Virus record (IMG/VR): IMGVR_UViG_3300024259_000010
Coordinates: 124,001-188,000 of that record
DNA length: 64,000 nucleotides
Reading direction: 5' to 3' (one strand)
In this document: positions 6,401-37,211 of the stretch, piece by piece
How the letters are laid out: the number at the start of each line of letters is the position of its first letter
How positions within the stretch are numbered: position 1 is the stretch's first letter
Translations under genes and position numbers: made by a program
Notes under the pieces: model-generated
Seen by the model: the letters and a program-made list of their open reading frames with translations, nothing else
Told to the model about the DNA's origin: nothing
Database searches by the model: none

Positions 6401-7570
6401 GTCCAAGAGATTGAATCTATTAATGGTGCAGGTAGGCATCACTTTATTAGTGACCATATGACTGGTAATACATTTGTGTACACATTAGAAGGTAATAACT
6501 ACGATCTACATGTAGGATATCTTGATTATGTATGGAACGAATCTGTTTCAACATTTGAACTAACTGATGTCAAACATTATGGTTTTACAAATATACAAGA
6601 TATAGTCATTAGTGATAATACTGTATATGTGTTCAACAATGGTAATAGATTACAGCGAATCAATTGGTTTAGACATGTTGGGTTTAATCATAATAAAGAA
6701 TACACTAGTTTATCAGGGCCAACGGAAAACGATATTAGTAGTATTGCTCCATGTGGATCAAATACATTAATATGTGGTACCACGGATGATGATGTTATTA
6801 TCCTAAAAATACATGAAGATGTAGTAGAGCAAATCCGATTACTTGGCGTACCTTCACATGGAATTATAAATGCACATTGGATCAGAAATGGTTATCGTGA
6901 AGCCGATATTATTATTGATGATGATTCCGGTGGACATAGTTCTGCTATATTAAGTTGGGATATTGATATTGATGAAACTCCACCTGTTCCAGTACATAAG
7001 TTATTAACTAGTAATATTCCACACCCAGTATGTTTCTATATAAACGGTGTGACTATTCCTCCTGTACATACAGTGCTTCATGTTGATCTACATCCATATC
7101 TTATGTATGATTATGTTAATTCATATCATTATACTTTATGCGGTATTAAGATATCTTATGCTTATATGCAAGACTTTGATTATACTGATGAGTCTATACC
7201 CACGATGTTAAATAATGATACTGTGATTAATACAGATGGTACAGATAGAAATATTGATACTGATTTCAGTACTAATAACTTCGATCAACAAACTCATGAT
7301 ACAAAGGTTATAGGTTATGTAAATGATCCAATTGATACAGATGATTCAAACGATATCTTAAAATATATCGCACCTGTAAAAACATTTGATTGGATAAATG
7401 ATACTATCGAATGGACTGATGTACCGTTTAGAGTATATAAGAATTATATGGTTAATACATTTAAAATTGGTGACACTACAACAGTTGCAAATTGGAACTT
7501 ATCGTATGATAACAGCTTATATATCCCATTGTCTGCAGATGTGTTAATTCCAGAAGTGGACATAGATTAA
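3452..7570 (+). CDS. Large virion/baseplate structural protein (position of phiKZ gp27), enlarged
   Basis: 1372 aa acidic ORF starting 2 nt after the upstream stop; TQLTHSDFLIP and IPELYEHSDADIVDFL segments; synteny. Confidence 0.55.
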   Translation: MKNVAYAAEAFRHYLSTELFDIYDPVESTRGLTMQVLSGPLGSVPILNEGVTTHLFNYNKRSSDGTYYENLEIFVDDIGDYNKWILCSVNNHVFSGTILDTPKPGNEIENHLPLDRGAGERYSRLPNPVIPKLDAFNLKDLSTILPDNNVKIISKDGKMLPLHNIKVQPDNSTVDSVSGHVYMLIPYAHFLNSGTVSSGNFDDFFMTVDNEKRSFSRIVDTADGTGFYTSSDGFMTFADGMFINSAVQLPLDKEVMQYTTYNTLVTEARKVDIILSNVYDGDDTLVHIDKSITNTRCFSINDCDIFLCDREQLSEGKGLCINNEIWTRCTQLTHSDFLIPNSILDRYKALLGTTELTMVIYLYPGIVSSTIIDSKHKIPELYEHSDADIVDFLKGDHVDTLEYDFWTIESLRDSYFKFVQPGVRRLSDLSVDGFKVEQSNIQALWDKFTLHDFIESMGYYVFNKVVYKDRFFLTADDIDYVNGNIIISRPAGYLDKEVKYIIREIGTNIIFTHTSVMENNVDYTLYSENIINDFNIPAQCHILVDVGILDPQQEYVVDVIELKASHVTFVPPSIDSATERLIIRKHRNFNVFKLQSNKFGIYKWEYVSDPSNIIEFIQINDISYILFTETFWCKTYAVSFGDGFDEIDATFGDIKQGLNINEIVTDYYEDGDLIRTIKRDDYADNVIGKFELQGVDYKEPWFASMQSGIWNNDALWDMDALWDEDTDELVNAYIHDIGVPVEATDIVVRTKLKATHVGGTAFLNDVEFTRSSSLPLTFISDDTEVDYDVIYNTIDELWNIVDNTDTSATVFVSNSKLGPYTPEGFPGSGETIELEESVGFRLPTPDYKMLDAHSKGWIHNNILCISNDDTSIAICAYRAMEVFDTWTLPNGAEVNNAVIREQDSLAFVCEKDTGIVHVLSIDENNLFTFKHSINLAPANIMNITCVADSENIILELESPVADKVAYLYKYIFANEFVESTFELVQEIESINGAGRHHFISDHMTGNTFVYTLEGNNYDLHVGYLDYVWNESVSTFELTDVKHYGFTNIQDIVISDNTVYVFNNGNRLQRINWFRHVGFNHNKEYTSLSGPTENDISSIAPCGSNTLICGTTDDDVIILKIHEDVVEQIRLLGVPSHGIINAHWIRNGYREADIIIDDDSGGHSSAILSWDIDIDETPPVPVHKLLTSNIPHPVCFYINGVTIPPVHTVLHVDLHPYLMYDYVNSYHYTLCGIKISYAYMQDFDYTDESIPTMLNNDTVINTDGTDRNIDTDFSTNNFDQQTHDTKVIGYVNDPIDTDDSNDILKYIAPVKTFDWINDTIEWTDVPFRVYKNYMVNTFKIGDTTTVANWNLSYDNSLYIPLSADVLIPEVDID

Positions 7571-7580
7571 GGAATAAATT

Positions 7581-9683
7581 ATGAATGGAAAAATAAGCCC
7601 CTTAAAAACGTACAATAGTTTCGACATGGAGATGACTGCTGATTCTATTGGCCGATTGGCAAAGATACAATTGTTTACTAAACAAGTTGATCATGTACTA
7701 TCTGATTTTACTTCTGATATACCGTTTCTAACTGATGTTGACATTGTTGTCATATTAGGTGATAAAGAATTAAGTAGAGGTATTGATTATGTTATTTATG
7801 AAGAAGAAGAAAATGGTATATTTAAAACAAAGTTAAAACTTATTAATCACCAGTTGCTTATTGATACTGTGGATAATACTAAAGTCAAGATCTATATAAC
7901 ACGACGTAGTATTGATACTGCACTCGTATATAACGCCCTTGGTGATGATATTGTATCACAAGAGAATAGAGTAAATGCCCATAGAGATAATGATTACATA
8001 GCAAATGAAATTGATGGTATTACAAGGTATGTGACTTCTAATCATTTAACAGAGGTTGTAAATAATCCTAATGTTTCAGGTGTTTGGGAATTGGTTGTTA
8101 AGACGAGTTGTTCTTTTCAGTCGATCAGTGATCTGATAAAATTCCATCCTAATCCATACGCGATGATAGATGCAATTCAAGAAACCATTAATACATATGA
8201 TAAATTCAGTTCCGAATTAGGCGATGATACAATAGTAACTGAAGCCCCAAATAAGAAAATAATACTAGGGCTAGACTATATTAAAATTGTAAATCTATTA
8301 CTATCGGATGGTGGTATTGTAACAGAATTAGAAAGTATAATTAGTGCTGACTACTTAGGATTTACTAATTTCTTACTTAAGTATTCTATTACACTACAGG
8401 ATCATAAATTCTTGGATGCTAGGTTATATGATATATATATGAATCCTGATATTGATAATCCGATTAACCTCGGTGGATTGGATGGATTATTAGGCGATCT
8501 ACAATATCATATGTATCCTGGGTTTACTCATGTACATGCGATAGATACGAATGGTACTAGTGAAATTATAGGTAATGATGATGGTGATATTGTTAGCCCA
8601 CCCGCTGATGAGGAACTATGTGTAATGCCTGTAGTAAATACACCACCAGTGGCTAACGCACAAAATGTGACTACAGAGATGGATATAGATAAGGATATCG
8701 TATTGACAGGTAGTGATACAGATGTGACCGATGTATTAACATATACAGTAGATGATGAACCTACACATGGTAGTTTATCTGGTACTGAGCCTAATCTGAC
8801 GTACATACCTGATGGTGGTTATTATGGACCTGATTCTTTTACATTCATAATTAACGATGGGTATGTAGACTCACTTCCAGCGACTGTAGATATTACTGTC
8901 AATGAAGTGTTTGAAGATCCATTTGCTATTGAATATGGATTAAATAACTTTGCTGCGTCTATTGCTGCGGTAAACCAGGTAGATCAGACACTAAATATAA
9001 ACATGTCAGAAATGCCTTACATTCTTACAGGTATTACAATTGAGGATGGTTATGATGTAGAGATTGAATGTGAATGGGCTCATAATTATAATGGTAAAAC
9101 TAAGCGTACAATGTGTGCTGTTTCGAATGATCAAGTGGTAGATTGGCCGCCTACAATGCCAGATGCCCCTGAACCATATGGTGCATTAGATGTAATATAT
9201 GCTTTGGAAGAAAAGGGTGATACATATAGGTATACAAATGAGGGTAGATCTATCTGGCAGTATTCCGGATATGGTTACTTTAATGGTATGCAAACCGATG
9301 GGTTCTATCAGGAAGATGTGCGATATGTCATAGGTAAGAGTGGTACTACCATGTATAGAGGTAATGACACTACTGTAACAGGATGTACAGGTATTAGGAA
9401 TTCTAATAGAGGTATAACATTATTTGGTTCACAAATAAATGGTACTTATAGTCACCCAATACAAATGCACGGTTATGCATACAATTGTATTTTCTATTCA
9501 TTGAAGATATGGTCTAGTGATACAAGAAACGATCAAACTTTATTACATCATTTAATTGCAGTACCTTCCGGATGGACAGATGGTATTATAACAGCTACTG
9601 TTAACTGTGTTTATGATAAAGTAGATGGTGTATTCCACGAACCTGGATTCATGTCATTTGGTATTACTGAATCTATTACATAA
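7581..9683 (+). CDS. Virion structural protein (position of phiKZ gp26) with C-terminal cadherin/Ig-like and lectin-like extension
   Basis: 700 aa. VNTPPVANAQNVTT...LTGSDTD...LTYTV...PTHGSLSG..PNLTYIP...GPDSFTFIINDG is a typical bacterial Ig-like (Big_9/cadherin-like) repeat. Confidence 0.6.
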   Translation: MNGKISPLKTYNSFDMEMTADSIGRLAKIQLFTKQVDHVLSDFTSDIPFLTDVDIVVILGDKELSRGIDYVIYEEEENGIFKTKLKLINHQLLIDTVDNTKVKIYITRRSIDTALVYNALGDDIVSQENRVNAHRDNDYIANEIDGITRYVTSNHLTEVVNNPNVSGVWELVVKTSCSFQSISDLIKFHPNPYAMIDAIQETINTYDKFSSELGDDTIVTEAPNKKIILGLDYIKIVNLLLSDGGIVTELESIISADYLGFTNFLLKYSITLQDHKFLDARLYDIYMNPDIDNPINLGGLDGLLGDLQYHMYPGFTHVHAIDTNGTSEIIGNDDGDIVSPPADEELCVMPVVNTPPVANAQNVTTEMDIDKDIVLTGSDTDVTDVLTYTVDDEPTHGSLSGTEPNLTYIPDGGYYGPDSFTFIINDGYVDSLPATVDITVNEVFEDPFAIEYGLNNFAASIAAVNQVDQTLNINMSEMPYILTGITIEDGYDVEIECEWAHNYNGKTKRTMCAVSNDQVVDWPPTMPDAPEPYGALDVIYALEEKGDTYRYTNEGRSIWQYSGYGYFNGMQTDGFYQEDVRYVIGKSGTTMYRGNDTTVTGCTGIRNSNRGITLFGSQINGTYSHPIQMHGYAYNCIFYSLKIWSSDTRNDQTLLHHLIAVPSGWTDGIITATVNCVYDKVDGVFHEPGFMSFGITESIT

Positions 9684-9780: not shown

Positions 9781-10461
9781 ATGGATAACAGTAAATATTT
9801 TGAGAAGAAGGGGAGATCGTATATCTTCAAAGGAGATCTCTTGGAAGTGTTTATACCTATGCGGTATGCACAACATGGTTATTTGGAAATAGGGAACAAT
9901 GTTTCTACTATTGGTATTTTTGACATGACTATTAATGGTACAATTGAAACAGGTTATCTATTAGGTGCTGTTATTGAAATGTATCCATCTGATATTGAGT
10001 CAGTAACTATTGACCAACAGAAGTATGCAAAACTTATTCTACATAAAGATGATGTATTTATTAAAGACTGTAATGTTGTTAAAGATGCTAAGATCTCATA
10101 TATTATCTTTTATGAAATGTTCCACTCAGGACACTACCCTAAGTTTTTGAAGTACTTCGATTGTATTGGTATCTTTGATAGAATTATGAAAGCTAATGGA
10201 GACTCGTTCTCAGCTGACCATATGATCTTTGAAATGATTGTATCTGTATTGTTTAGAGATACTAAGAATATGTCTACTCTATTTAGACATACTAATATGA
10301 AGGGTACTTACCAAACTATCCCTCTAAGAACTATCGCACATGTTGCACAATCTACTACAGGTAAGATCATGGGGTCTTATATGAATGAAGGGTTGGATGC
10401 AGCTATTGTCAATGCTGACGATGTTGTATCAAATGATATTGAAGATCTATTAAGGCAGTAA
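9781..10461 (+). CDS. Probable virion RNA polymerase beta' C-terminal fragment (phiKZ gp176 / SPN3US gp244-like)
   Basis: 226 aa; C-terminal STTGKIMGSYMNEGLDAAIVN...IEDLLR resembles the beta' C-terminus; lies near the prohead protease as in phiKZ-like phages; late-type motif at 9743. Confidence 0.55.
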   Translation: MDNSKYFEKKGRSYIFKGDLLEVFIPMRYAQHGYLEIGNNVSTIGIFDMTINGTIETGYLLGAVIEMYPSDIESVTIDQQKYAKLILHKDDVFIKDCNVVKDAKISYIIFYEMFHSGHYPKFLKYFDCIGIFDRIMKANGDSFSADHMIFEMIVSVLFRDTKNMSTLFRHTNMKGTYQTIPLRTIAHVAQSTTGKIMGSYMNEGLDAAIVNADDVVSNDIEDLLRQ

Positions 10462-10462
10462 T

Positions 10463-11437
10463 ATGAGGTATATATATTCCATAGATGAACGTGTAGCTCA
10501 TTATTCAGGTAACCCATATAACCATATATTCCATCGAAGTGATTTACCAAAAATGTTTGATTACCATAAATGGGCAGTATGTATGGGAGATGATATTGAC
10601 AATAGTGATATTGAAGATACAACGGAAATGAGCGATTATCATAAAAATTTGGTTGGATGTTATCATAGAATATATAATACTATTAATTCTGTAAAAAAAG
10701 AATATCCACATTTAAAAGATAAAAAAGCATTGGCTCATGTTTCAGATAATACAGCCTCATGGGAGATACCTATAATATGTAAAACCAGACCTATCGATAA
10801 TATTGGTGGTAATACTATAGCTCCTATCCGGATGACAAGAAATTATGGACATGTATTAGAATTACCTAGGATAGATTGTAAAGTATCGGAAAAAATACCT
10901 GGTGTTATGTGGCGTGGACTACTACATCTTAAAAAAAATTATAGACTGAATAACAGATTGTCTTTAATTGAGAAGTTTTATAATCATCCAAATGATCTAA
11001 TAAATATAAAACATACAGGGATACCATGTAATGAGTTTGTAGCAAGTGAAGAAGTACTTGGATATAAATTTGGTGATTATTTGAGTGTGGGAGAGATGCT
11101 CAAATATAGATTCAATGTATCTATAGAGGGTTGGGATATGGCATCTAATCTCCAGTGGATTCTTGCTAGCAACTCTATTGCTATGGCCCCTAAGATGGTT
11201 ATAGAGAGTTGGTTCATGGAGAGTAAGTTAGAACCATGGGTCCACTACATACCTATTGAAGATGATTGTTCAGATTTAATAGAGGTATATGAATGGGCAT
11301 TAATGCACCCAAATGCATGTGATGTGATTAATAGAAATGCTAAGATGTTTATGAATGAATTTGTAGATAAAAAACGTGAAAGAGAAATATTCTTTAGAGT
11401 AGTTAAGAAGTATCTTGAGAATTGTAATTTTGTTTAA
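10463..11437 (+). CDS. Glycosyltransferase family 90 (CAP10-like), paralog 1
   Basis: K..GVMWRG, R, MLKYRFNVSIEGWDMASNLQWILASNS, ESWFME..LEPWVHYIPI motifs. Confidence 0.85.
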   Translation: MRYIYSIDERVAHYSGNPYNHIFHRSDLPKMFDYHKWAVCMGDDIDNSDIEDTTEMSDYHKNLVGCYHRIYNTINSVKKEYPHLKDKKALAHVSDNTASWEIPIICKTRPIDNIGGNTIAPIRMTRNYGHVLELPRIDCKVSEKIPGVMWRGLLHLKKNYRLNNRLSLIEKFYNHPNDLINIKHTGIPCNEFVASEEVLGYKFGDYLSVGEMLKYRFNVSIEGWDMASNLQWILASNSIAMAPKMVIESWFMESKLEPWVHYIPIEDDCSDLIEVYEWALMHPNACDVINRNAKMFMNEFVDKKREREIFFRVVKKYLENCNFV

Positions 11438-11446
11438 GGGAGTAAT

Positions 11447-12385
11447 ATGAATTATAAATATACGATTGATGAGAGGGTAAATTTCTATTTAGGTAATATG
11501 GATAAAAGATGTTACGATTACATGAAGGATATTACACCACGTGTACGTAATTATATATATACTGTATTGATAGGAAATAATATTGACAACACTGAAGTAT
11601 TAACTGGTGGTAAGGGTGCATTAGTTAATTCATTTAAATATATAGAAGGCACTCTTAATAAATTAATCAACGATGGTGTATGTCCTATAGATAAAACAAT
11701 ATTGGTATATTTAGCGGATCAAAATAGATTACGAACATTCCCAATGATTGCTAAAACACGTTTGATTGATGATAATGGTAATATTACCATAGCACCTATT
11801 GGTAGAGCTAGACACTATGGTCCCGTAGCAGACCTGCCTAATATTGATTGTAAAGTTAGTGATAAATGTAATAAAATTGTCTGGAGAGGACATTGTCAAC
11901 CTATGAATAATATTATTCATATTAGACAAGAAGTGGTTTCTAAATTTGCCGAACATAAAAACTCTAATATAGATATTGGATATTCTTCGGGTGTAGCAAC
12001 TGGATCTACATTATTAAAGAATAAGATGACATTACGTGAATTGTTGAGATATAGATTTAATATATCATTGGAAGGAAATGATGTTGCTACCAACCTTAAG
12101 TGGATTCTTGCTAGTAATTCAATAGCCGTAGCTCCTAGGATGACAACCGAGGGTTGGTTTATGGAAAGTAAGTTAGAACCTTGGGTACACTATATACCTT
12201 TAGATGACGACTGTATGGATATAGAGGACAAGTTAAATTGGGGGATATCTAATCCTGATAAATGTATTGATATTAATAAAAATGCTAATAAGTTTATGTT
12301 AGAGTTCGTGGACATAGAACGTGAGAATGAAATATTCTACAGAGTCCTGAAATCATATATTGAAAACATACATATAAATATTTAA
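11447..12385 (+). CDS. Glycosyltransferase family 90 (CAP10-like), paralog 2
   Basis: KIVWRG, LLRYRFNISLEGNDVATNLKWILASNS, EGWFMESKLEPWVHYIPL; clearly paralogous to the upstream gene. Confidence 0.85.
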   Translation: MNYKYTIDERVNFYLGNMDKRCYDYMKDITPRVRNYIYTVLIGNNIDNTEVLTGGKGALVNSFKYIEGTLNKLINDGVCPIDKTILVYLADQNRLRTFPMIAKTRLIDDNGNITIAPIGRARHYGPVADLPNIDCKVSDKCNKIVWRGHCQPMNNIIHIRQEVVSKFAEHKNSNIDIGYSSGVATGSTLLKNKMTLRELLRYRFNISLEGNDVATNLKWILASNSIAVAPRMTTEGWFMESKLEPWVHYIPLDDDCMDIEDKLNWGISNPDKCIDINKNANKFMLEFVDIERENEIFYRVLKSYIENIHINI

Positions 12386-12398
12386 AAGAAAGTAATCT

Positions 12399-13145
12399 AT
12401 GTTAGATTTTATAATAACCGGCCCATCTAGATCAGGTACAACAGGGTTAACCTACCTATTAAATTCTAGCTCTGAAGTACTATGTGGTCATGAAACTCAC
12501 GTGTTGGATTATTGGGACAAAGATATATCAGATCGTATAAGAAATAATATATTAGAGAAAATGTTTTATTCTGACCGTACACCAAGCATACTTGATTTTA
12601 CACCGAAAGGTGTAACCCCAGATATGTTAAAGACAATAGTTGAGACAAGTTCTACTGGTAAAGAATTATTTGATAGATTAAACAGTATTGCAAAATGTAA
12701 TTGTGTTGGTGATAAAGTACCTGGATATATTGTAACCCTTCCACAAATTCTTAAAAATAACCCACAACTTAAATTACTGATATGTATTCGTGATGGTCGA
12801 TCTATACTGGCATCACATTTACGTGGTTTAGAACCCGGATGGGCTACAGACAATATAAAAGATGCAGAAGAGCGAATAGTTATCTTTATGAATATCATTA
12901 ATAATATTGAGAATCATGATAAAGTTATATATGTTCCATATGAACACTATACACAACATACTGATTTTTTGATTAGAAGACTTGAGTCGTTTCTTGATAC
13001 CAAACTATCTAACTGTAATACTGATAAATATCGTGACTATACAGATTGGGATGACGTGTTCAAACAGCTACCGAAAGATTATATGGATAAAGTATCTCCA
13101 GAATTTATAGAATATCAAAAGAAATTTGGATATTCTTTAGTGTAA
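12399..13145 (+). CDS. PAPS-dependent sulfotransferase
   Basis: 5'-PSB loop FIITGPSRSGTT, GDKVP, 3'-PB motif IRDGRSILAS, YE motif. Confidence 0.8.
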   Translation: MLDFIITGPSRSGTTGLTYLLNSSSEVLCGHETHVLDYWDKDISDRIRNNILEKMFYSDRTPSILDFTPKGVTPDMLKTIVETSSTGKELFDRLNSIAKCNCVGDKVPGYIVTLPQILKNNPQLKLLICIRDGRSILASHLRGLEPGWATDNIKDAEERIVIFMNIINNIENHDKVIYVPYEHYTQHTDFLIRRLESFLDTKLSNCNTDKYRDYTDWDDVFKQLPKDYMDKVSPEFIEYQKKFGYSLV

Positions 13146-13342: not shown

Positions 13343-14188
13343 ATGAAAAATAAAAGTCTAGCATTCTCTGTTCAGACCATGCAAACTGTTCTCGGTAATG
13401 GACTAAAGTCTATTAAGCCAGACAAAGATGGTGTTTATAAAGGTGTACCATTAGCTGTAATTGGCAAACCATCTAGAAACAATGTTGTATACGATCAGAA
13501 TAGCTTTGTTGAATCTATCACTAATCCTAATACACGATTCTATAAGAGTTTAGTAGAAGGTGGTCTTGAAGGCGAGTGGGGTCATCCCATGAACATTGGT
13601 TTAAATAATAAAGATGCTATCATGCGTACCATGCAGATCGATGGTTCGAGAGTATCACATTACTTCACTAAAGTATATGCTAAGAAAACCAAAGATGGTG
13701 AGTACTACGTTGTATATGGTGACATTGTTCCTTTCGGACCTAATGGTCAGTACTTAGCTGCATCATTCCAAGACACTAAAAGAAATACTGCATTCTCTTT
13801 ACGCTCACTGACAACTGATCCTGAATCAATTGGTGGTGGTTTATGCCGTAAGAAGATCCTTGCATTAATTACTTTCGATGCTGTTAATACCCCTGGGTAT
13901 CAAGAAGCATGTAAATGCTTTATGGATACTGGCGAAGAATCATTTAAGTATGAACTTACTGAAGAGCAGATCGTATCTGCTGGTCTAGAAGACTTTGCTA
14001 CAGTTGAATGTGCTGAAGTTATTGGACAAGAAACTGTATCACATCAGTCTTTATTAGATTTACTAGAAACTGATAGCGTCACGCTTGCTACAAAAGAAAT
14101 CTCTGTTGTTGGAAACTTTGATAAGAAAACTGGTAGTATCCGTACTGGCACTTCTAATATCTCTGCGTTCCATGGTCTGTTCCGTTAA
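13343..14188 (+). CDS. Prohead (head maturation) protease, phiKZ gp175-like
   Basis: GEWGHP (His), AFSLRS (Ser), TFDAVNTPG (Asp); C-terminal G-x-E motifs (TGEE, AGLE, IGQE) consistent with autoprocessing. Confidence 0.85.
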   Translation: MKNKSLAFSVQTMQTVLGNGLKSIKPDKDGVYKGVPLAVIGKPSRNNVVYDQNSFVESITNPNTRFYKSLVEGGLEGEWGHPMNIGLNNKDAIMRTMQIDGSRVSHYFTKVYAKKTKDGEYYVVYGDIVPFGPNGQYLAASFQDTKRNTAFSLRSLTTDPESIGGGLCRKKILALITFDAVNTPGYQEACKCFMDTGEESFKYELTEEQIVSAGLEDFATVECAEVIGQETVSHQSLLDLLETDSVTLATKEISVVGNFDKKTGSIRTGTSNISAFHGLFR

Positions 14189-14208: not shown

Positions 14209-14784
14209 ATGTTTAATAAATTACGATTAATGAAAAGAAAGTCTGTGAATTATCCGACGATCTCTCATCATAAAGATGAAGATGGAAAGTCAACATGGAT
14301 AATTTCCATTCGTGGAATTATTGGAGGACAAGAATTATATACTGATGTATGTAATATCTTACTAACAGCATCTGAAGATGATACTGTTATCATTACTTTA
14401 AATACTCCAGGGGGAGTGGTCTTTACTGGGCTAGCAATTATTCATGCTATGCAGAAAAGTAGAGCAACCGTAGTAACGAGAGTTATCGGAATGGCTGCAT
14501 CATGTGGAGCGTTAATCTGGTCATATGGACAAAAGTTAGAAATGTGTCCATTCTCTAGATTAATGTTTCACGCATCTTCTGGGGGATTCATGGGTAAGAC
14601 CCGTGATCAGAGAGATTATGCTGAAGTCACCGAAACTCTTATGAAGAGTATAAATCAACGTGCTTTAACTAAGAACATCATTACTGCAAAACAGTTTGAA
14701 GATATGTTTGAAGCACGTCAAGATGTATACTTAAATTCTAAGGATTTAGAAAACAATAACGTGGAGTTCAACTATGCATCTTAA
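14209..14784 (+). CDS. clpP: ClpP-like serine protease
   Basis: LNTPGG, GMAASCG (catalytic Ser), LMFH (catalytic His), D-x-Y-L near the C-terminus. Confidence 0.8.
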   Translation: MFNKLRLMKRKSVNYPTISHHKDEDGKSTWIISIRGIIGGQELYTDVCNILLTASEDDTVIITLNTPGGVVFTGLAIIHAMQKSRATVVTRVIGMAASCGALIWSYGQKLEMCPFSRLMFHASSGGFMGKTRDQRDYAEVTETLMKSINQRALTKNIITAKQFEDMFEARQDVYLNSKDLENNNVEFNYAS

Positions 14785-15580
14785 TTTAAATAAATTGAAT
14801 TCTGAAGGTAAAGCTGATATAATTGAACCATCACAAGAAGATCTGTTCTCAATCGAAGCAAATAATTCTCATGAAGATGAGCCTAAGCTAGATGTTGAAA
14901 TGGGTTTATCTGGAAACCTAGTTACAGTTGAAACAATGGAAGAAGAAGAGATCGTAGTAACACCTGTGATCGGAGTAGAAAACTTAGAGGATGAAATTCC
15001 TTTAGTATCTGCACCTGGTCCACAAGGTCTACCTACAGAACCTAAAGAGAAAGAACCTAATACTGTTTATGTTCTGACTCCAACTAAAGTACATGCTTAT
15101 CTACATGGTAAGTGTTCTGAATCTGTAGATACATTAATTCACTTATTATCGCAAGCGACTGAAGATACTGAAGCATATATTTCATATTGTTATCCAATGA
15201 TTGATATCTATGATGCATTAGAATTAGTTGGTGTAATCGGAGCTACTAAAGCAAAAGTTACTTTAGATATTATTGGTGTATCGAGTGTTGTAGATTTATT
15301 ACTATTGACGAATGAAGACTGTACTATTAATCTAGCACAGAATCTTATCGTCACTGGTATTAAAGAAGTTAGCTTTGGCTCTCTTTATAATCTAGAAGAA
15401 TCTTTGATCGCAACTAAGAATTATCAGGAGCTAGTATATACCTCACTGAAAGAGAATGGAATCTTATCGGATGATGAGATAGATACTCTATCTGCAAAAG
15501 GTGGTATGTTATATCTCGATAAGACAATAGTTGATTCACGTTCTAAGAAAACAACACCTGTTGAAGAACTCTCTGAATAA
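14774..15580 (+). CDS. Degenerate ClpP-fold protein with acidic N-terminal extension
   Basis: The C-terminal ~170 aa align by eye to the upstream ClpP (DALELVGVIGATKAKVTLDIIGVSS vs TGLAIIHAMQKSRATVVTRVIGMAAS) but lack the PGG and His motifs; overlaps the clpP stop. Confidence 0.5.
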   Translation: MHLNLNKLNSEGKADIIEPSQEDLFSIEANNSHEDEPKLDVEMGLSGNLVTVETMEEEEIVVTPVIGVENLEDEIPLVSAPGPQGLPTEPKEKEPNTVYVLTPTKVHAYLHGKCSESVDTLIHLLSQATEDTEAYISYCYPMIDIYDALELVGVIGATKAKVTLDIIGVSSVVDLLLLTNEDCTINLAQNLIVTGIKEVSFGSLYNLEESLIATKNYQELVYTSLKENGILSDDEIDTLSAKGGMLYLDKTIVDSRSKKTTPVEELSE

Positions 15581-15674: not shown

Positions 15675-17771
15675 ATGATTTTATTCAAGAAGGATATTTT
15701 AACAAATAAATGTATTATCGACACTAAGACTAAGAATGTAAGTTTTCTTAAGATGTCTATGGTTTTAAAAAAACTAGGTGTTAAAAATAATTTATTTATG
15801 TTAGTATTATGTGACGAGACATTGCAAGGTATTGATCCACATAGTACTACATTGACAGAGAATCAACAATTACGTGTAGCTTATGAAGCTAAGATTAACC
15901 CGTGGTATTTCTTTCGAGAAGTAATTCGAATACCATCACAGGGTGGAGAGCCAGTTCGATACAAATTGAACAGAGCTAACTTAGCATTGATATGGTTATA
16001 CTTAAACAATGTTGATACATACTTAACTATGCCACGACAGATTGGTAAAACAGTTGGTGTTATTTCTATAACATCATACTTCATGTATGTATTAGGTCGT
16101 AACTCAAACGTAGCTATGTTTGCAAAAGATGCAGACTTGAGAACGGAGAACGTTAGACGTCTAAAGGATTCCAAAGAAGGACTCCCTCCATATATGGTAC
16201 AAGAAGGTTCGGCATATAACACTAATAACCAAGAGACAGTGGAATACAAACCACATAATACAAAGTACATTACTTTTGTTGCACAGTCTGATAAGAAGCG
16301 TGCAGCTAAACAAGGTCGTGGTGAATCTTTTGTATGGTCGCACTGGGATGAGTTAGCATTCTATATTAATAATAAACTTTCATATCCTTCAGCTATTGCA
16401 GCTTCGGAAACTGTTGGTGAATTAGCAAGAGACCAAGGACTACCTTGTGCAACATTGATTACTACAACGGCTGGATTCACATCTACTGCCGAAGGTAAGT
16501 ATGCACATAGTTTCAAATCTCAAGCATTACGTTTCTCTGAGAAACTTTATGATACAGAAGACAATGAATCTCTCAAAGAGATTGTTGAGAACTCTTCCGG
16601 TAACAACTTTGTGTATGTAGAATATAGTTACAAACAGTTAGGCAAAGATGAGAAATGGTTTAAGAATGTTACTCGTAATAAGCCACCTGAAGTGATATGT
16701 ATTGACTACTTAAATAAGTGGGTTCACGGCTCCGGAGAGTCTATCATATCAAAGCGTTTAATCGACTTACTGGAGAAGAACATAGAAGAACCGGTTTCAA
16801 TAACTATCGATAACGGAATAGTTATGCGATGGTTTGCAGAACAGACGGATCTAGATTCACCTATGATTAAAAATATTCCATTTATCTTATCTAGTGATAC
16901 ATCAGATAATATTGGAAAAGACTTTACAACTCTAGTATTAACTAATCCAAAAGATATGGCCGTTGTTATGACATGTCGATGTAATCAATCTAATATGGTA
17001 CTTGTTGCTAATGCTATATTTAATCTAATGCGCCGGTTCCCGAACTCAGTATTTATTCCTGAGAGAAATAGAGCTGCTACATTGATTGATGTTATTGTAC
17101 ATATGATAACAACCAAAACTGATTGGGACCCATTCAAACGTATATTCAATTACTACTTCCAAGATAAACATGACACTGTTAATGTTAGAAGTTTGGATAT
17201 TGAATTAGGTTCAGTTCGTAAGATGTTTGGTTTCAAGACTACAGGTGCTGAGAATTCTCGTAAGTTTATTTACAGTAAAGTTTTGAACACTACTATTGAA
17301 CGGAACTATATGCGTATCTTTGATAAAACTATTGTTGATGAGATATGTGACCTTGTAGTTCGTGATGGACGTATTGATCATTCCATGAGTGGTAACGATG
17401 ATACACTTATTGCATACTTAATAGGTTGTTGGTTCATCATGTATGGTAAGCATGTATATCTATATGGGATAGATTCTAATGATATATTATCTGTAAAAGA
17501 TGATGAAGATGCAGAAGCTGCTGAAAACACTGGTGCTATTAAAAACAGAATTGTTTATCTACAAGATAAATTATCATCTGGTGAAGTATCAGAGTTTATG
17601 AGACATGCATTTGAATCAGAACTTAAAGAATTAAAAACTTTAATACCTGAGGATGATGGATTATCATCAGACGTTGTTAGTATGGCACAGGTGGATAAAG
17701 TTAAATCTGTTGAATACAGAACACTTGACACAGGTGGATTATCTAATAAATTAGAATGTTTATTTAATTAA
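15675..17771 (+). CDS. terL: Terminase large subunit (phiKZ gp25-like)
   Basis: NPWYFFREV, Walker A MPRQIGKT, GRG, Walker B WDE, TTTAG, nuclease SDTSD and RIDH...NDD. Confidence 0.92.
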   Translation: MILFKKDILTNKCIIDTKTKNVSFLKMSMVLKKLGVKNNLFMLVLCDETLQGIDPHSTTLTENQQLRVAYEAKINPWYFFREVIRIPSQGGEPVRYKLNRANLALIWLYLNNVDTYLTMPRQIGKTVGVISITSYFMYVLGRNSNVAMFAKDADLRTENVRRLKDSKEGLPPYMVQEGSAYNTNNQETVEYKPHNTKYITFVAQSDKKRAAKQGRGESFVWSHWDELAFYINNKLSYPSAIAASETVGELARDQGLPCATLITTTAGFTSTAEGKYAHSFKSQALRFSEKLYDTEDNESLKEIVENSSGNNFVYVEYSYKQLGKDEKWFKNVTRNKPPEVICIDYLNKWVHGSGESIISKRLIDLLEKNIEEPVSITIDNGIVMRWFAEQTDLDSPMIKNIPFILSSDTSDNIGKDFTTLVLTNPKDMAVVMTCRCNQSNMVLVANAIFNLMRRFPNSVFIPERNRAATLIDVIVHMITTKTDWDPFKRIFNYYFQDKHDTVNVRSLDIELGSVRKMFGFKTTGAENSRKFIYSKVLNTTIERNYMRIFDKTIVDEICDLVVRDGRIDHSMSGNDDTLIAYLIGCWFIMYGKHVYLYGIDSNDILSVKDDEDAEAAENTGAIKNRIVYLQDKLSSGEVSEFMRHAFESELKELKTLIPEDDGLSSDVVSMAQVDKVKSVEYRTLDTGGLSNKLECLFN

Positions 17772-34838: not shown

Positions 34839-35075
34839 TTTTAACATAAAAATGAATGGTATACAATACTTTATGTGTATCATTATATGCAATATAAAGA
34901 TAAAAAAATTGCATCGATGAAAATTGATGGATGTTTGCAACAGTTTATAGCTAGATCGTGTAATTAACGTGTGTGTGTTGGTGTGTGTGCTCTAGCATTG
35001 AACTTAGTAAATAAAAATTTATTTAATCACTTGCAATTAATAGTTTATATGAATAAATATAAAAAGGATAATATT

Positions 35076-37211
35076 ATGGATATTAACGCATTATTACAAA
35101 ACATCGAAGATGAATGCCGCGAAGGTAAAGTCGGTGGTGATGTTCTTACTACAGCTCGCGTTGTAAGTAAGTCTGTTACTGACTTCCTCTCTACAAATGC
35201 TGTAGGGTCTTCTTCCGAAGATTTCGTCGGACAAACTTTTAACATGAATAAAGCTTTCGGACAAGAGGAACTTGAATCCCTCGGTTCTAGCTCTATTATC
35301 GCACTCGTTGAAGAAGCTGGTGTTCCTACTCATTATAAAGCCGAAGCTGCAGCTACTGTTGCTAACCTGCTTTTCCGTGCTGCTGGTTCTTCTAGTGATT
35401 TCAATGCTGTTGTAAGCTCACAGACCAAACGTGCTGATAACGCCGGTTCGTCTGTTATTGGTATTGAACAGTTCATGCCTGAAGCAGTAAGTAACTTCTA
35501 CGTTGGCCAAGAGGCTTTCGGTGCTACTTCTGACCGTGTAATTTCTGACCTCCAGGTTGCTATTACCGTTAGCTTGCTCAAATGGCATAACACGATTACG
35601 CCTCGCGTACTCTCTAACATCCCTACAACCCAGCCTACGGTTAACTACATCCGTGAAGAACTGACTGTTTACCAACTCGAATCCGATGTTGAAAACGACC
35701 AGTCCCTGATCGACCTGTATGAAAACCCTGCTCTTGTTAGCAATGAACTGACCCGTATCATTCCTTTAGATAAGAATGATGAAGTCGGTGGTGCTGGTGG
35801 AGTCGGTGGAGCTGTTGTTTCAGATGGTATCCTCAATTTCGGCGTCGAAGCACGTCTATTGGAATTAGGTATCAAAGCTGATGTCTATGGATATAATAAA
35901 TATAATCGTACTGATATCGTTGCTGACGGTGTTAAGCTTGACACGATTCATATCAATATTACATCTGATGGTGGAACCACTGAATCGTTCGCTATTTCTA
36001 TCCCTGACAGTCGTTCACGTTTGACTCGTTCTAATAATCAGCTCAGTACTATCCGTACTGCACATATTGATTATACAACGACTCTTAACGTTAAATCTAC
36101 TGCTGACGGTGTTACAACTCCTTCTACTGAGTTGTTAGCGATTCTCGCTGCTACTGGTGATAGCCTGGTTATCAAACTTGAAGCTACTCCACGTATTGAT
36201 ATCCGTGACGGTATGGCTCATTGCTTAGGTGCATTATCTGTATCTGCTGTTTCTGATAACGGTGGCGATGCTGATAGCGCAACTACTGCTGCTCTTACTG
36301 CTTCTGATATCGAACTTAAGGGTTATTCCTTAGACGCTCGTTATGCAGAAGAAAATATGCGCAAGTCGAATATCGCTACTACTACTGAGCGTGCTCAGCT
36401 GGTATACGAAATTCCACAAGGCCGTAACTACCTCTTGGACGTTCCACTGAACGGACCACAGGTTGATCGTTCGCAGAACACTGCTAACCTTTACAATGTA
36501 TGTCGTATTGGTCAAGACAATGTAGTTCTGAAAACTATCTTGGCTGTGCTTGCTGATGTTGGTGTTGCTACTGAAGCATATGACTTAGATCCTACGCGTG
36601 AAAATCGCCCAGGTGCTATGTTCGCTGCAGGTGGACGTGTACGTCCTACGTATATCGCTGATACTCTTAACATGACTGGAATCGATTCGTTCGATGACGC
36701 TCGTCGTCAAGAAGCTATTCAGGGTCGCGTTCTAACGTACCTCAACTCTGTTGTTCAGCAGATCATGGCTACTTCGTTCTTCAGCCAACAGCTTGATGGC
36801 AATAGTGCTCCGACTTTCCGTCTGATCACTGGTCCTCAGATTCTTGGTAACATTGTTGGTGCTAAGCCAGGTGAATTCCAGGTTGAAAACGCTAATGGTG
36901 TTGAACTGACATTGAAGATGACCTCTGGCGTTGTGCTTGAGTGTGTTACTTCTACGTTTGACTTCATGCAAGATAAGATCGTTATCGTGCCGTTCCTCTC
37001 CGGAGATCCTGCATCTGATCTTAACTTTGGACATAACCGTGACTTCGGTACTGTTGTTGGTAGTTATACCCACAATGAAAACGGTGCTGCTGTACAGCGT
37101 CTGCTTGCTAATATCCGTGAGCTTCCTGTTCCTACCAATGTTATTGGTGCGATCTTGGATGTTGAAGGTATTGACATCGCTACGTTCCGTGCTGACATTG
37201 TCACGCCGTAA
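35076..37211 (+). CDS. Major capsid protein (phiKZ gp120-like)
   Basis: 711 aa from ATG 35076 (AAGGA RBS); G-x-E propeptide sites (FGQE, IGIE, VGQE); GYSLDARYAEENMR and LNFGH motifs; strongly biased high-expression codons; strong terminator; synteny with dnaB. Confidence 0.85.
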   Translation: MDINALLQNIEDECREGKVGGDVLTTARVVSKSVTDFLSTNAVGSSSEDFVGQTFNMNKAFGQEELESLGSSSIIALVEEAGVPTHYKAEAAATVANLLFRAAGSSSDFNAVVSSQTKRADNAGSSVIGIEQFMPEAVSNFYVGQEAFGATSDRVISDLQVAITVSLLKWHNTITPRVLSNIPTTQPTVNYIREELTVYQLESDVENDQSLIDLYENPALVSNELTRIIPLDKNDEVGGAGGVGGAVVSDGILNFGVEARLLELGIKADVYGYNKYNRTDIVADGVKLDTIHINITSDGGTTESFAISIPDSRSRLTRSNNQLSTIRTAHIDYTTTLNVKSTADGVTTPSTELLAILAATGDSLVIKLEATPRIDIRDGMAHCLGALSVSAVSDNGGDADSATTAALTASDIELKGYSLDARYAEENMRKSNIATTTERAQLVYEIPQGRNYLLDVPLNGPQVDRSQNTANLYNVCRIGQDNVVLKTILAVLADVGVATEAYDLDPTRENRPGAMFAAGGRVRPTYIADTLNMTGIDSFDDARRQEAIQGRVLTYLNSVVQQIMATSFFSQQLDGNSAPTFRLITGPQILGNIVGAKPGEFQVENANGVELTLKMTSGVVLECVTSTFDFMQDKIVIVPFLSGDPASDLNFGHNRDFGTVVGSYTHNENGAAVQRLLANIRELPVPTNVIGAILDVEGIDIATFRADIVTP

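What the first reader, a model, noticed from the sequence alone, without database searches (positions are those of the whole stretch)
14209..15580. Active ClpP plus degenerate ClpP-like partner between head protease and terminase
Seen: an intact ClpP (Ser and His motifs) overlaps a second ORF whose C-terminal part parallels it but lacks PGG and the His, and which has a ~95 aa acidic leader containing IGVE. The phage already has a gp175-type head protease immediately upstream. Known: ClpP/ClpR and ClpP1/P2 hetero-oligomers exist in cyanobacteria, plastids and actinobacteria. Inference: a phage-encoded heteromeric Clp core, possibly switched on or packaged through head-protease cleavage of the leader, that clears propeptides or hijacks host ClpX/ClpC.
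Basis: partly seen in the sequence, partly recalled or inferred. Interest (0 to 1): 0.7.

Follow-up and report, generated by a model that had tools for sequence, protein, structure and literature searches.

The report
Phage ClpP with a dead ClpP partner
An uncultured marine giant phage related to phiKZ carries, next to its head-maturation protease, an intact ClpP-type peptidase and a catalytically dead ClpP copy whose acidic leader looks like a cleavage site for that protease; this three-gene set is kept across a whole clade and seems undescribed.

Summary
ORF 14209-14784 is a ClpP-family peptidase with an invariant Gly-Gly/Ser/His/Asp set. ORF 14774-15580 overlaps it by 11 nt.

The second ORF has no Pfam or PHROG hit, yet its residues about 96-258 are a ClpP fold:
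- Profile-profile comparison with the active family: 99% probability, E 6.6e-18.

All catalytic positions are lost in 29 family representatives. The only invariant residue of that family is Glu69, in a leader motif [G/S]-x-E. Prohead proteases of the S80 family cut after this kind of site. V-I-G-x-E recurs in this phage's major capsid protein, in the tail of its S80 protease and in two further proteins that phiKZ-type phages carry in the virion.

The order S80, ClpP, dead ClpP is kept in 11 of 11 metagenomic lineages, and the last two genes overlap in 10. A complex model supports binding (0.64; best control 0.01).

Most likely this is a virus-encoded pair like ClpP/ClpR, brought to the prohead and matured through the dead subunit's leader. 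What it degrades is not known. Use of host ClpX has no support. I rate it a new variant of a known kind.

The parts
13343..14188 (+). S80 (phiKZ gp175-type) prohead protease, 281 aa. Its C-terminal tail carries two conserved [G/S/A]-x-E sites, including V-I-G-Q-E at aa 226-230 (14018-14032).
   Evidence: PF20034 E 1.7e-31 and phrog_3014 E 2.3e-34. Tail motifs are conserved in 8 lineages. Coordinates checked.
14209..14784 (+). Catalytically intact ClpP-family serine peptidase, 191 aa, basic (pI 8.4). Oxyanion G68-G69 (14410-14415), Ser98 (14500-14502), His121 (14569-14571), Asp172 (14722-14724). It has no acidic leader.
   Evidence: PF00574 at 73.2 bits; phrog_1827 E 8.2e-34. PDB ClpP chains reach E 3e-13. 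G68, G69, S98 and H121 are invariant and D172 nearly so in 16 relatives and in 11 syntenic lineages.
14774..15580 (+). Catalytically dead ClpP-fold paralogue (pseudo-ClpP), 268 aa. It overlaps the ClpP gene by 11 nt.
   Evidence: No Pfam, PHROG or PDB sequence hit on its own. A family of 34 representatives was found by exhaustive HMMER. hhalign against the active family gives 99.0% probability, E 6.6e-18.
14774..14980 (+). Acidic N-terminal leader (aa 1-69, pI 4.06), proposed propeptide. It is predicted mostly disordered.
   Evidence: Composition. pLDDT is below 60 over residues 1-90. The leader is acidic in all 29 family members.
14912..14938 (+). Conserved leader motif G-x-L-x-x-[VI]-[ED]-[DE]-[LI] (here GNLVTVETM, aa 47-55). 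Candidate docking or targeting element.
   Evidence: G47 and L49 are each kept in 27 of 29 members. The leader HMM hits no other ORF in the 235.8-kb genome.
14966..14980 (+). V-I-G-V-E (aa 65-69), the proposed S80 cleavage site, with the cut after Glu69.
   Evidence: E69 is the only invariant column of the 29-member alignment, and position 67 is G or S in 28 of 29. S80 proteases cut after Glu at A/S-x-E (PMC10052503, PMC5694885). V-I-G-x-E occurs 5 times in this genome against 1.26 expected.
15059..15547 (+). ClpP-fold domain (aa 96-258) without catalytic residues. Val172 (15287-15289) stands in place of Ser and Thr194 (15353-15355) in place of His. The near-invariant His123 (15140-15142) lies in the predicted interface.
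15675..17771 (+). Large terminase subunit of phiKZ type; marks the head and packaging block.
   Evidence: phrog_32359 E 3.3e-45. About 32% identity to phiKZ-like terminases over 95% of the length.
35454..35468 (+). V-I-G-I-E at aa 162-166 of the phiKZ-type major capsid protein ORF (34971-37211). Candidate maturation site with the same motif as the ORF3 leader.
   Evidence: PF25620 PhiKZ_MCP E 1.5e-18. Motif.

Best explanation
The locus encodes a three-gene protease cassette of an uncultured marine phiKZ-like jumbo phage: an S80 prohead protease, an active ClpP-family peptidase (ORF2), and a catalytically dead ClpP-fold paralogue (ORF3) with a roughly 69-aa acidic propeptide.

Shown: ORF3 is homologous to ORF2 and adopts the ClpP fold. 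It has lost the Gly-Gly, Ser, His and Asp positions across its whole family. ORF2 keeps all of them. The three genes are always adjacent, and the last two are translationally coupled.

Inferred, in decreasing order of confidence:
1. ORF2 and ORF3 assemble side by side in ClpP-type rings, as ClpP and ClpR do.
2. The ORF3 leader is cut after the invariant Glu69 by the adjacent S80 protease. This marks ORF3 as a prohead protein that carries the leaderless ORF2 along with it. ORF3 would thus be the targeting and assembly subunit and ORF2 the catalytic one.
3. Inside the maturing head the chamber works without an ATPase as a second-stage peptidase. It would shred the many propeptide and core fragments released by S80 so that they can leave the capsid.
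For: Homology and fold:
- A profile of 29 dead members against ORF2 alone gives 96.4% probability, E 1.4e-9.
- The same profile against 16 active relatives gives 99.0%, E 6.6e-18 over 153 columns.
- The AF2 model has pLDDT above 90 over aa 91-258.
- A first, shallow model built from only two sequences already hit only ClpP.

Dead against active: at the Ser-, His- and Asp-equivalent columns the family has I/V/A/P, S/G/K/A/T and K/S/N/D. ORF2 relatives keep G68, G69, S98 and H121 invariant.

Partnership:
- The order S80-ClpP-pseudoClpP is found in 11 of 11 lineages, down to 16% pairwise identity.
- The junction between the last two genes overlaps by 1-14 nt in 10 of 11.
- The complex model scores 0.64 in the median (runs 0.64, 0.63, 0.68) against a best control of 0.01. 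That mark was reached by 58 of 80 solved complexes and 2 of 110 mismatched pairs. Partner pLDDT is 81-83, and the runs agree in 60-95% of contacts.
- The near-invariant His123 of ORF3 touches the conserved P-T-I-S segment of ORF2.

Leader as S80 substrate:
- E69 is the only invariant residue of the family and sits in [G/S]-x-E.
- S80 enzymes cut after Glu at A-x-E or S-x-E, and apart from the protease's own C-terminal self-cleavage they remove N-terminal propeptides (PMC10052503, PMC5694885).
- The S80 tails in this clade keep two sites of the same kind, where homologues are known to autoprocess (PMC5694885).
- V-I-G-x-E occurs 5 times in the genome against 1.26 expected. The five are in the capsid protein, the S80 tail, ORF3, an RNA-polymerase beta-like subunit and a head-tail joining virion protein.

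Head context: virion protein phrog_2926, terminase, and a weak phiKZ inner-body Pfam hit in one relative.
Against: No experiment or proteome exists for this clade. It is known only from metagenomes.

The complex prediction may succeed from memory of solved ClpP rings. ORF2-ORF2 and ORF3-ORF3 controls could not be run, so separate homo-oligomers are not excluded.

The three-residue cleavage motif is short. Its enrichment is modest (5 observed; 5 was also the maximum seen in 200 shuffles). Whether the RNA-polymerase subunit is the virion-packaged one was not tested.

The leader HMM matches no other protein of the genome, so it is not a shared capsid-targeting signal.

Cultured phiKZ-like phages mature their heads without any ClpP, so the pair is not generally needed for that process.

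One low-depth contig from another sample carries a stop at Gly69 of ORF2. This could be an error or a natural knockout.
Confidence: 0.5

Rival explanations
1. The pair acts in the host cytoplasm as a phage-made Clp core that docks onto host ClpX, ClpA or ClpC and redirects host ATP-dependent proteolysis. The leader would be a regulatory or auto-inhibitory extension unrelated to head assembly.
For: ORF2 is a bona fide ClpP-family member. Many phages carry single ClpP genes outside head modules, for example XacN1 and Vibrio Straboviridae phages, where the gene lies among replication genes. PHROG labels the family 'ATP-dependent protease'.
Against: The Pfam match of ORF2 begins at model position 26, so the part of ClpP that forms the axial loops facing the unfoldase is not matched. 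In the complex model the first 21 residues of ORF2 pack onto ORF3 instead. The genome encodes no AAA_2 or Clp ATPase. The position between prohead protease and terminase is fixed in 11 of 11 lineages. The invariant [G/S]-x-E in the leader is unexplained by this reading.
Confidence: 0.15
2. ORF3 is an exapted structural head protein (scaffold, core or inner-body component) that happens to derive from a duplicated ClpP. It does not work with ORF2, which forms its own homo-oligomeric peptidase.
For: ORF3 has lost all catalytic residues and evolves faster than ORF2 (mean pairwise identity 0.23 against 0.33). It carries a propeptide-like leader as phiKZ-type internal head proteins do (PMC5694885). 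Homo-oligomers could not be tested.
Against: The core and the interface helices stay conserved: His123 is near-invariant and lies in the predicted contact. The genes are strictly adjacent and overlap the ClpP gene in 10 of 11 lineages. The heterodimer prediction lies well above its controls. Pairwise divergences of ORF2 and ORF3 track each other more closely (r 0.87) than either tracks S80 (0.73, 0.77), although this largely reflects shared descent.
Confidence: 0.15
3. ORF3 is a zymogen-type regulator. Its subunits, with the acidic leader, hold the ORF2 chamber closed or inactive in the cytoplasm, and S80 cleavage switches the peptidase on only where S80 is active. Head targeting would come by other means.
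For: The charges are complementary: the leader has pI 4.1, ORF2 has pI 8.4 and its first 30 residues have pI 10. There is a conserved leader motif upstream of the cut site that is unique to this family. The cellular ClpP of E. coli is itself made with a propeptide (general knowledge).
Against: There is no direct evidence for inhibition. The leader is predicted disordered with low confidence, and its contacts were not modelled. This reading overlaps the best explanation rather than excluding it.
Confidence: 0.12
4. ORF3 is a poison subunit that enters host ClpP rings and blocks host proteolysis, for instance to protect phage proteins. ORF2 would supply a phage-controlled replacement.
For: ORF3 is a dead subunit of the same fold as host ClpP. 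Mixed rings of active and inactive subunits are known in cells (ClpP/ClpR, general knowledge).
Against: ORF3 is far closer to the phage ClpP-like family (E 6.6e-18) than to any cellular ClpP (best PDB sequence hit E 4.7e-4). The reading gives no rationale for the S80-type site or for the head-module position.
Confidence: 0.04

Closest known systems
ClpP/ClpR mixed proteolytic cores of cyanobacteria, plastids and apicoplasts (for example the Chlamydomonas plastid Clp core, PDB 7EKO/7EKQ)
   Same: An active ClpP-family subunit is paired with a paralogue of the same fold that lacks the catalytic triad. The genes are co-inherited. A Chlamydomonas plastid Clp-core subunit (deposited as a proteolytic subunit) is the best PDB sequence hit of the ORF3 family profile and ranks high by fold.
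   Different: The origin is independent: ORF3 is nearest to phage ClpP-likes, not to ClpR. It is virus-encoded and sits in a head-assembly block. The dead subunit carries a long acidic leader with a prohead-protease site. No dedicated AAA+ partner is encoded, and the N-terminal part of the ClpP model is not matched in ORF2. Mixed rings have not been demonstrated here.
ClpP1/ClpP2 hetero-complexes (Mycobacterium, Listeria, Pseudomonas; for example PDB 9NDJ, 4RYF, 4U0G)
   Same: Two ClpP paralogues encoded together and working as one barrel. These structures are among the top fold matches.
   Different: By general knowledge both subunits are catalytically competent in those systems and form separate homo-heptameric rings that stack. 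Here one partner is dead, and the model places the two side by side.
ClpP-like (clan SK) prohead proteases of HK97- and lambda-type phages and stand-alone phage 'ATP-dependent Clp protease' genes (phrog_1827, phrog_94, phrog_1684)
   Same: ORF2 matches these PHROGs (E 8e-34 to 1e-21). Fifteen of the 34 members of alignment A2, which includes two active ClpP-like outliers, match phrog_1827. In the dead members that were looked at individually the match is weak (E 1e-3 to 1e-7). Such proteases work in proheads without an ATPase.
   Different: In those phages the ClpP-like enzyme is the sole prohead protease, and by general knowledge it is often fused to scaffold or capsid protein. Here the prohead protease is an S80 (assemblin/T4 gp21-like) enzyme, and the ClpP-like pair is additional. 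XacN1 and Vibrio phages have a single ClpP with no dead partner.
Propeptide-bearing head proteins of phiKZ, 201phi2-1 and SPN3US processed by the S80 protease (gp175/gp245)
   Same: An N-terminal propeptide ends in small residue-x-Glu. The gene lies in the head block beside the S80 gene. The same motif occurs in the capsid protein and in the protease tail (PMC10052503, PMC5694885).
   Different: In the literature read here, no processed head protein of those phages is described as a ClpP homologue. Three cultured phiKZ-like genomes have no ClpP domain at all. Cleavage here is predicted, not measured.

Membership tests
ClpP family (MEROPS S14 / Pfam PF00574) - for ORF2 | Significant match to the family profile | tested here: met
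   73.2 bits against a cut-off of 20.2, E 3.3e-20. PDB ClpP chains reach E 3e-13.
ClpP family (MEROPS S14 / Pfam PF00574) - for ORF2 | Ser-His-Asp triad and Gly-Gly oxyanion motif | tested here: met
   G68, G69, S98, H121 and D172 are present. The first four are invariant and D172 is kept in at least 90% of 16 relatives and in 10 of 11 syntenic lineages.
ClpP family (MEROPS S14 / Pfam PF00574) - for ORF2 | N-terminal axial loops and docking surface for a Clp AAA+ unfoldase | tested here: inconclusive
   The Pfam match starts at model position 26, and ORF2's first 39 residues are unmatched and basic. The phage has no AAA_2 ATPase. Docking pockets were not modelled.
ClpP family (MEROPS S14 / Pfam PF00574) - for ORF2 | Heptameric rings stacked into a tetradecameric chamber | not testable with these tools
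   The size limit of the complex tool allowed only a 1:1 model.
ClpR-type inactive ClpP paralogue - for ORF3 | ClpP fold | tested here: met
ClpR-type inactive ClpP paralogue - for ORF3 | Loss of catalytic residues | tested here: met
   Val172, Thr194 and Gly244 stand at the Ser, His and Asp positions. No conserved Ser, His or Asp at these columns in 29 members.
ClpR-type inactive ClpP paralogue - for ORF3 | Co-assembly with an active ClpP in one complex | tested here: inconclusive
   The model supports binding: 0.64 against a best control of 0.01. That mark was reached by 58 of 80 solved complexes and 2 of 110 mismatched pairs. Partner pLDDT 81-83; runs agree in at least 60% of contacts. The result may reflect memory of ClpP rings, and there is no biochemical test.
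ClpR-type inactive ClpP paralogue - for ORF3 | Common descent with cyanobacterial or plastid ClpR | tested here: not met
   The nearest relatives are phage ClpP-likes. The best cellular hit in the PDB is only E 4.7e-4. The resemblance is convergent architecture.
Substrates of S80 prohead proteases - for ORF3 | N-terminal propeptide ending in small residue-x-Glu | tested here: met
   [G/S]67-x-E69. E69 is kept in 29 of 29 and is the only invariant column. Motif definition from PMC10052503 and PMC5694885.
Substrates of S80 prohead proteases - for ORF3 | Actual cleavage and presence in proheads or virions | not testable with these tools
   The clade is known only from metagenomes. No member was found in 50,697 GenBank phage records with five diverse queries.

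The most novel reading that the evidence does not exclude
A virus builds its own ATP-independent ClpP-type degradation chamber from one live and one dead subunit. It loads the chamber into the prohead through the dead subunit's propeptide and uses it as a second-stage shredder of the fragments made by the prohead protease. Alternatively, it delivers the chamber with the DNA into the next host cell as an ejected protease. Either way this would be the first compartmentalised protease shown to work inside, or travel in, a phage capsid, and a defined example of a pseudo-enzyme serving as the targeting subunit of its active paralogue.
Probability: 0.3. Interest if true: 0.8.

Novelty: new variant of a known kind. 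Interest (0 to 1): 0.62.

Why it matters
Giant phiKZ-type heads undergo thousands of cleavages per capsid, and how the released propeptides are cleared is an open point (PMC9026906, PMC5694885). A conserved ClpP plus pseudo-ClpP pair attached to the prohead protease gene offers a concrete, testable candidate for that clearing step in one clade.

It is also a natural case of a dead enzyme retained as partner of its active paralogue, and it arose independently of ClpR. The family (34 representatives at 50% identity) is invisible to Pfam and PHROG searches with the window's own protein. It is absent from cultured phage genomes, so it is currently unannotated in metagenomes.

The [G/S]-x-E leader gives a simple handle for experiments. 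The S80 protease, ORF2 and ORF3 can all be expressed in E. coli.

Tried and rejected
- Direct searches with ORF3 found nothing: Pfam, PHROGs, PDB sequences; tblastn and blastn against GenBank phages; the ESM Atlas, whose own model has pLDDT 0.38 and gave meaningless hits.
- The word-indexed protein search found a single homologue. Only the exhaustive HMMER search opened up the family.
- IMG/VR pattern scans returned no relatives. Two scans could not be run because no stretch was conserved enough.
- tblastn of four further family members against GenBank phages gave no match.
- ORF3 as small terminase subunit: rejected. It has a ClpP fold, and other genes separate it from the terminase in several lineages.
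- ORF2-ORF3 as one gene joined by frameshift: rejected. The junctions are start-stop overlaps of 1-14 nt or a 14-nt gap, with a Shine-Dalgarno sequence here.
- The extra 267-aa gene after the pseudo-ClpP in L011 as a third paralogue: rejected (hhalign probability 0.1%).
- The leader as a shared capsid-targeting signal: not supported. The leader HMM hits only ORF3 in the genome.
- Population SNPs are too few to measure selection on ORF3: 2 synonymous changes and 4 non-synonymous changes at 3 codons.
- The paper that first defined the phiKZ cleavage motif (PMC3323674) is not held. The motif is cited from later open papers.
- Literature searches for phage ClpP/ClpR pairs found nothing relevant.
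Full report
**1. What is there**

The window is bases 124001-188000 of a 235,833-bp viral record from IMG/VR, estimated 91% complete. GC content is about 33%.

The stretch in question holds four co-directional genes:
- 13343-14188: a Peptidase_S80 prohead protease of the phiKZ gp175 type (PF20034 E 1.7e-31; phrog_3014 E 2.3e-34).
- 14209-14784: ORF2, 191 aa.
- 14774-15580: ORF3, 268 aa.
- 15675-17771: a large terminase, about 32% identical to those of phiKZ-like phages over 95% of its length.

Further downstream the window holds a phiKZ-type major capsid protein (34971-37211, PF25620 E 1.5e-18). The phage is therefore a distant relative of the phiKZ group. The same stretch occurs in several seawater metagenomes. 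Contigs from four runs cover it without insertions or deletions.

**2. ORF2 is an intact ClpP-family peptidase**

ORF2 scores 73.2 bits on Pfam CLP_protease against a cut-off of 20.2 and E 8.2e-34 on phrog_1827. It aligns to solved ClpP chains at up to E 3e-13.

G68-G69, S98, H121 and D172 are present. G68, G69, S98 and H121 are invariant, and D172 nearly so, in 16 relatives and in 11 syntenic lineages.

The Pfam match starts only at model position 26. The first 39 residues are unmatched and basic. In cellular ClpP that part forms the axial loops facing the unfoldase (general knowledge). The phage genome holds no AAA_2 or Clp-type ATPase.

**3. ORF3 is a dead ClpP paralogue**

On its own ORF3 hits nothing in Pfam, PHROGs or PDB sequences. 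It resembles ORF2 only faintly: BLASTP E 0.004, 20% identity over 59 aa, in register.

An exhaustive HMMER search of 1.84 billion representative proteins found 34 relatives. Two of them (P0028, P0033) are ordinary active ClpP-likes.

A profile of the 29 full-length, leader-bearing relatives, with those two active outliers, a fragment and two atypical members (P0011, P0034) left out, gives:
- against ORF2 alone: 96.4% probability, E 1.4e-9;
- against the ORF2 family: 99.0% probability, E 6.6e-18 over 153 columns;
- best PDB sequence hit: a Chlamydomonas plastid Clp-core subunit, E 4.7e-4.

At the columns matching ORF2's Gly-Gly, Ser98, His121 and Asp172, ORF3 has M-I, Val172, Thr194 and Gly244. 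The family shows no conserved catalytic residue there.

**4. The leader**

Residues 1-95 are acidic (pI 4.05) and predicted mostly disordered. All family members have such an acidic leader.

Two elements in it are conserved:
- G-x-L-x-x-[VI]-[ED]-[DE]-[LI] at residues 47-55, with G47 and L49 each kept in 27 of 29 members;
- [G/S]67-x-E69 some 12 residues later.

E69 is the only invariant column of the whole alignment.

S80 prohead proteases cut after Glu. SPN3US gp245 cuts at A-x-E, with Val preferred at P4 and Ser at P1'. phiKZ gp175 cuts, for example, at SLE-13 and SQE-122. Apart from the protease's own C-terminal self-cleavage, they remove N-terminal propeptides, and they trim their own C-terminal tails (PMC10052503, PMC5694885).

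In this clade the S80 tails keep two sites of the same kind in 8 of 8 lineages, here G-E-E and V-I-G-Q-E.

In this genome V-I-G-x-E occurs five times, against 1.26 expected from shuffled proteins; the maximum in 200 shuffles was 5. The five sites are:
- capsid protein, aa 162;
- S80 tail, aa 226;
- ORF3, aa 65;
- an RNA-polymerase beta-like subunit, aa 21 (phrog_3295);
- a head-tail joining virion protein, aa 24.

These are all proteins that phiKZ-type phages carry in the virion. Whether this RNA-polymerase subunit belongs to the packaged enzyme was not tested.

This is coherent circumstantial evidence that ORF3 is a substrate of the neighbouring protease and hence a prohead protein. It is not proof. 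The leader HMM finds no second protein in the genome, so the upstream motif is specific to this family.

**5. The pair is a conserved unit**

Contigs encoding eleven different family members, down to 16% pairwise identity and including the weakest hit P0034, all show S80, then ClpP, then pseudo-ClpP. A twelfth short contig shows the same order.

The ClpP and pseudo-ClpP genes overlap by 1-14 nt in 10 of 11 lineages. Here a GGAG precedes the ORF3 start.

Mean pairwise identities are 0.44 for S80, 0.33 for ClpP and 0.23 for pseudo-ClpP.

The cassette appears confined to this uncultured clade:
- Three cultured phiKZ-like genomes with the closest terminases have no ClpP domain.
- Five diverse family members find nothing in 50,697 GenBank phage records.
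- Other phages with a ClpP similar to ORF2 (XacN1, Vibrio Straboviridae) have a single gene among replication genes.

**6. Do the two bind?**

A complex model of ORF2 with ORF3 residues 91-268 scored 0.64 (three runs: 0.64, 0.63, 0.68) against a best control of 0.01. That mark was reached by 58 of 80 solved complexes and 2 of 110 mismatched pairs. These counts hold only roughly, because my own alignments were used. Partner pLDDT was 81-83, and the runs agreed in 60-95% of contacts.

The interface pairs the beta-sheet edge and the first 21 residues of ORF2 with ORF3 helices 115-132 and 146-157. This looks like the lateral contact within a ClpP ring (general knowledge). The near-invariant His123 of ORF3 touches the conserved P-T-I-S of ORF2.

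Both proteins have the ClpP fold, so the pass may reflect memory of solved rings. Homo-oligomer controls could not be run.

**7. Interpretation**

The firm result is a virus-encoded pair of an active ClpP-like peptidase and its dead paralogue, fixed next to the S80 prohead protease gene.

The most likely mechanism is that the two assemble together. The leader of the dead subunit is cut by S80 after Glu69 and marks the complex as a prohead component. The leaderless catalytic subunit is carried along. The chamber then degrades peptides without an ATPase during head maturation.

The proposed clearing of propeptide fragments fits an acknowledged need in these phages (PMC5694885, PMC9026906), but it is inference.

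Rivals, each given with its test in the rival section:
- a cytoplasmic core that uses host unfoldases;
- an exapted structural protein unrelated to ORF2;
- a zymogen-type regulator;
- a poison subunit for host ClpP.

**8. Comparison and novelty**

In architecture this is closest to ClpP/ClpR cores. It is not a member of the ClpR lineage, because the dead subunit arose from phage ClpP-likes.

It differs from ClpP-type prohead proteases of HK97-like phages, because here the prohead protease is an S80 enzyme and the ClpP pair is extra.

I found no description of such a pair in the held literature. I rate it a new variant of a known kind, of moderate to high interest.

Noticed in passing
window 10463-13145: Two paralogous glycosyltransferase family 90 genes (10463-11437 and 11447-12385; PF05686 E 4.5e-16 and 2e-18) and a sulfotransferase (12399-13145; PF13469 E 2.9e-13) sit between the conserved virion protein phrog_2926 (9781-10461) and the S80 protease. 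In most relatives the homologue of about 225 aa directly precedes S80. L002 has one 292-aa gene there, and two other contigs also hold a single extra gene. This looks like a lineage-specific insertion of sugar- or sulfate-modifying enzymes into the head block.
   Followed up: partly
window 14413: One low-depth contig (depth about 4) from another seawater run reads G>T here. That turns the invariant Gly69 codon of the ClpP gene into a stop (GGA>TGA). It may be an assembly error or a natural knockout variant. All other variants in the three genes are substitutions, mostly synonymous in S80 (10 of 11).
   Followed up: partly
G000:C1:208856-210937 and G000:C1:188062-189666 (outside the window; loci L026, L027): An RNA-polymerase beta-like subunit (phrog_3295 E 1.3e-134) and a head-tail joining virion protein (PF24214 E 1.4e-35) carry V-I-G-L-E at aa 21-25 and V-I-G-V-E at aa 24-28. 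This suggests short N-terminal propeptides removed by the S80 protease.
   Followed up: partly
window 34971-37211: The capsid protein ORF as listed starts at a GTG. The first ATG codons are at residues 27 and 36, so the true start is probably later. Besides V-I-G-I-E (aa 162-166) there is a second candidate site, V-G-Q-E, at aa 178-181.
   Followed up: no
L024:5001-6134 (P0011): One family member is 377 aa long. It has an extra N-terminal segment of about 110 aa ahead of the usual leader and dead ClpP domain, in the same S80-ClpP context.
   Followed up: no
L023:4328-5008: In the most divergent lineage the active ClpP is longer (226 aa), and my alignment shows Asn at the Asp172 column. This may be an alignment artefact. 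The gene upstream of S80 in that contig has a weak phiKZ inner-body protein Pfam hit (PF12699).
   Followed up: no
L022:2367-3110 (P0028) and P0033: The two active ClpP-likes nearest to the dead family are stand-alone genes. P0028 lies downstream of a PhoH-like gene with no S80 on its contig; the context of P0033 was not looked up. Both have long C-terminal extensions, Gln- and Glu-rich in P0028.
   Followed up: no
window 3452-9683: A 1372-aa ORF has no PHROG hit. A 700-aa ORF has a bacterial Ig-like Big_9 / cadherin-like domain (E 1.6e-11). Both lie just upstream of the head block.
   Followed up: no
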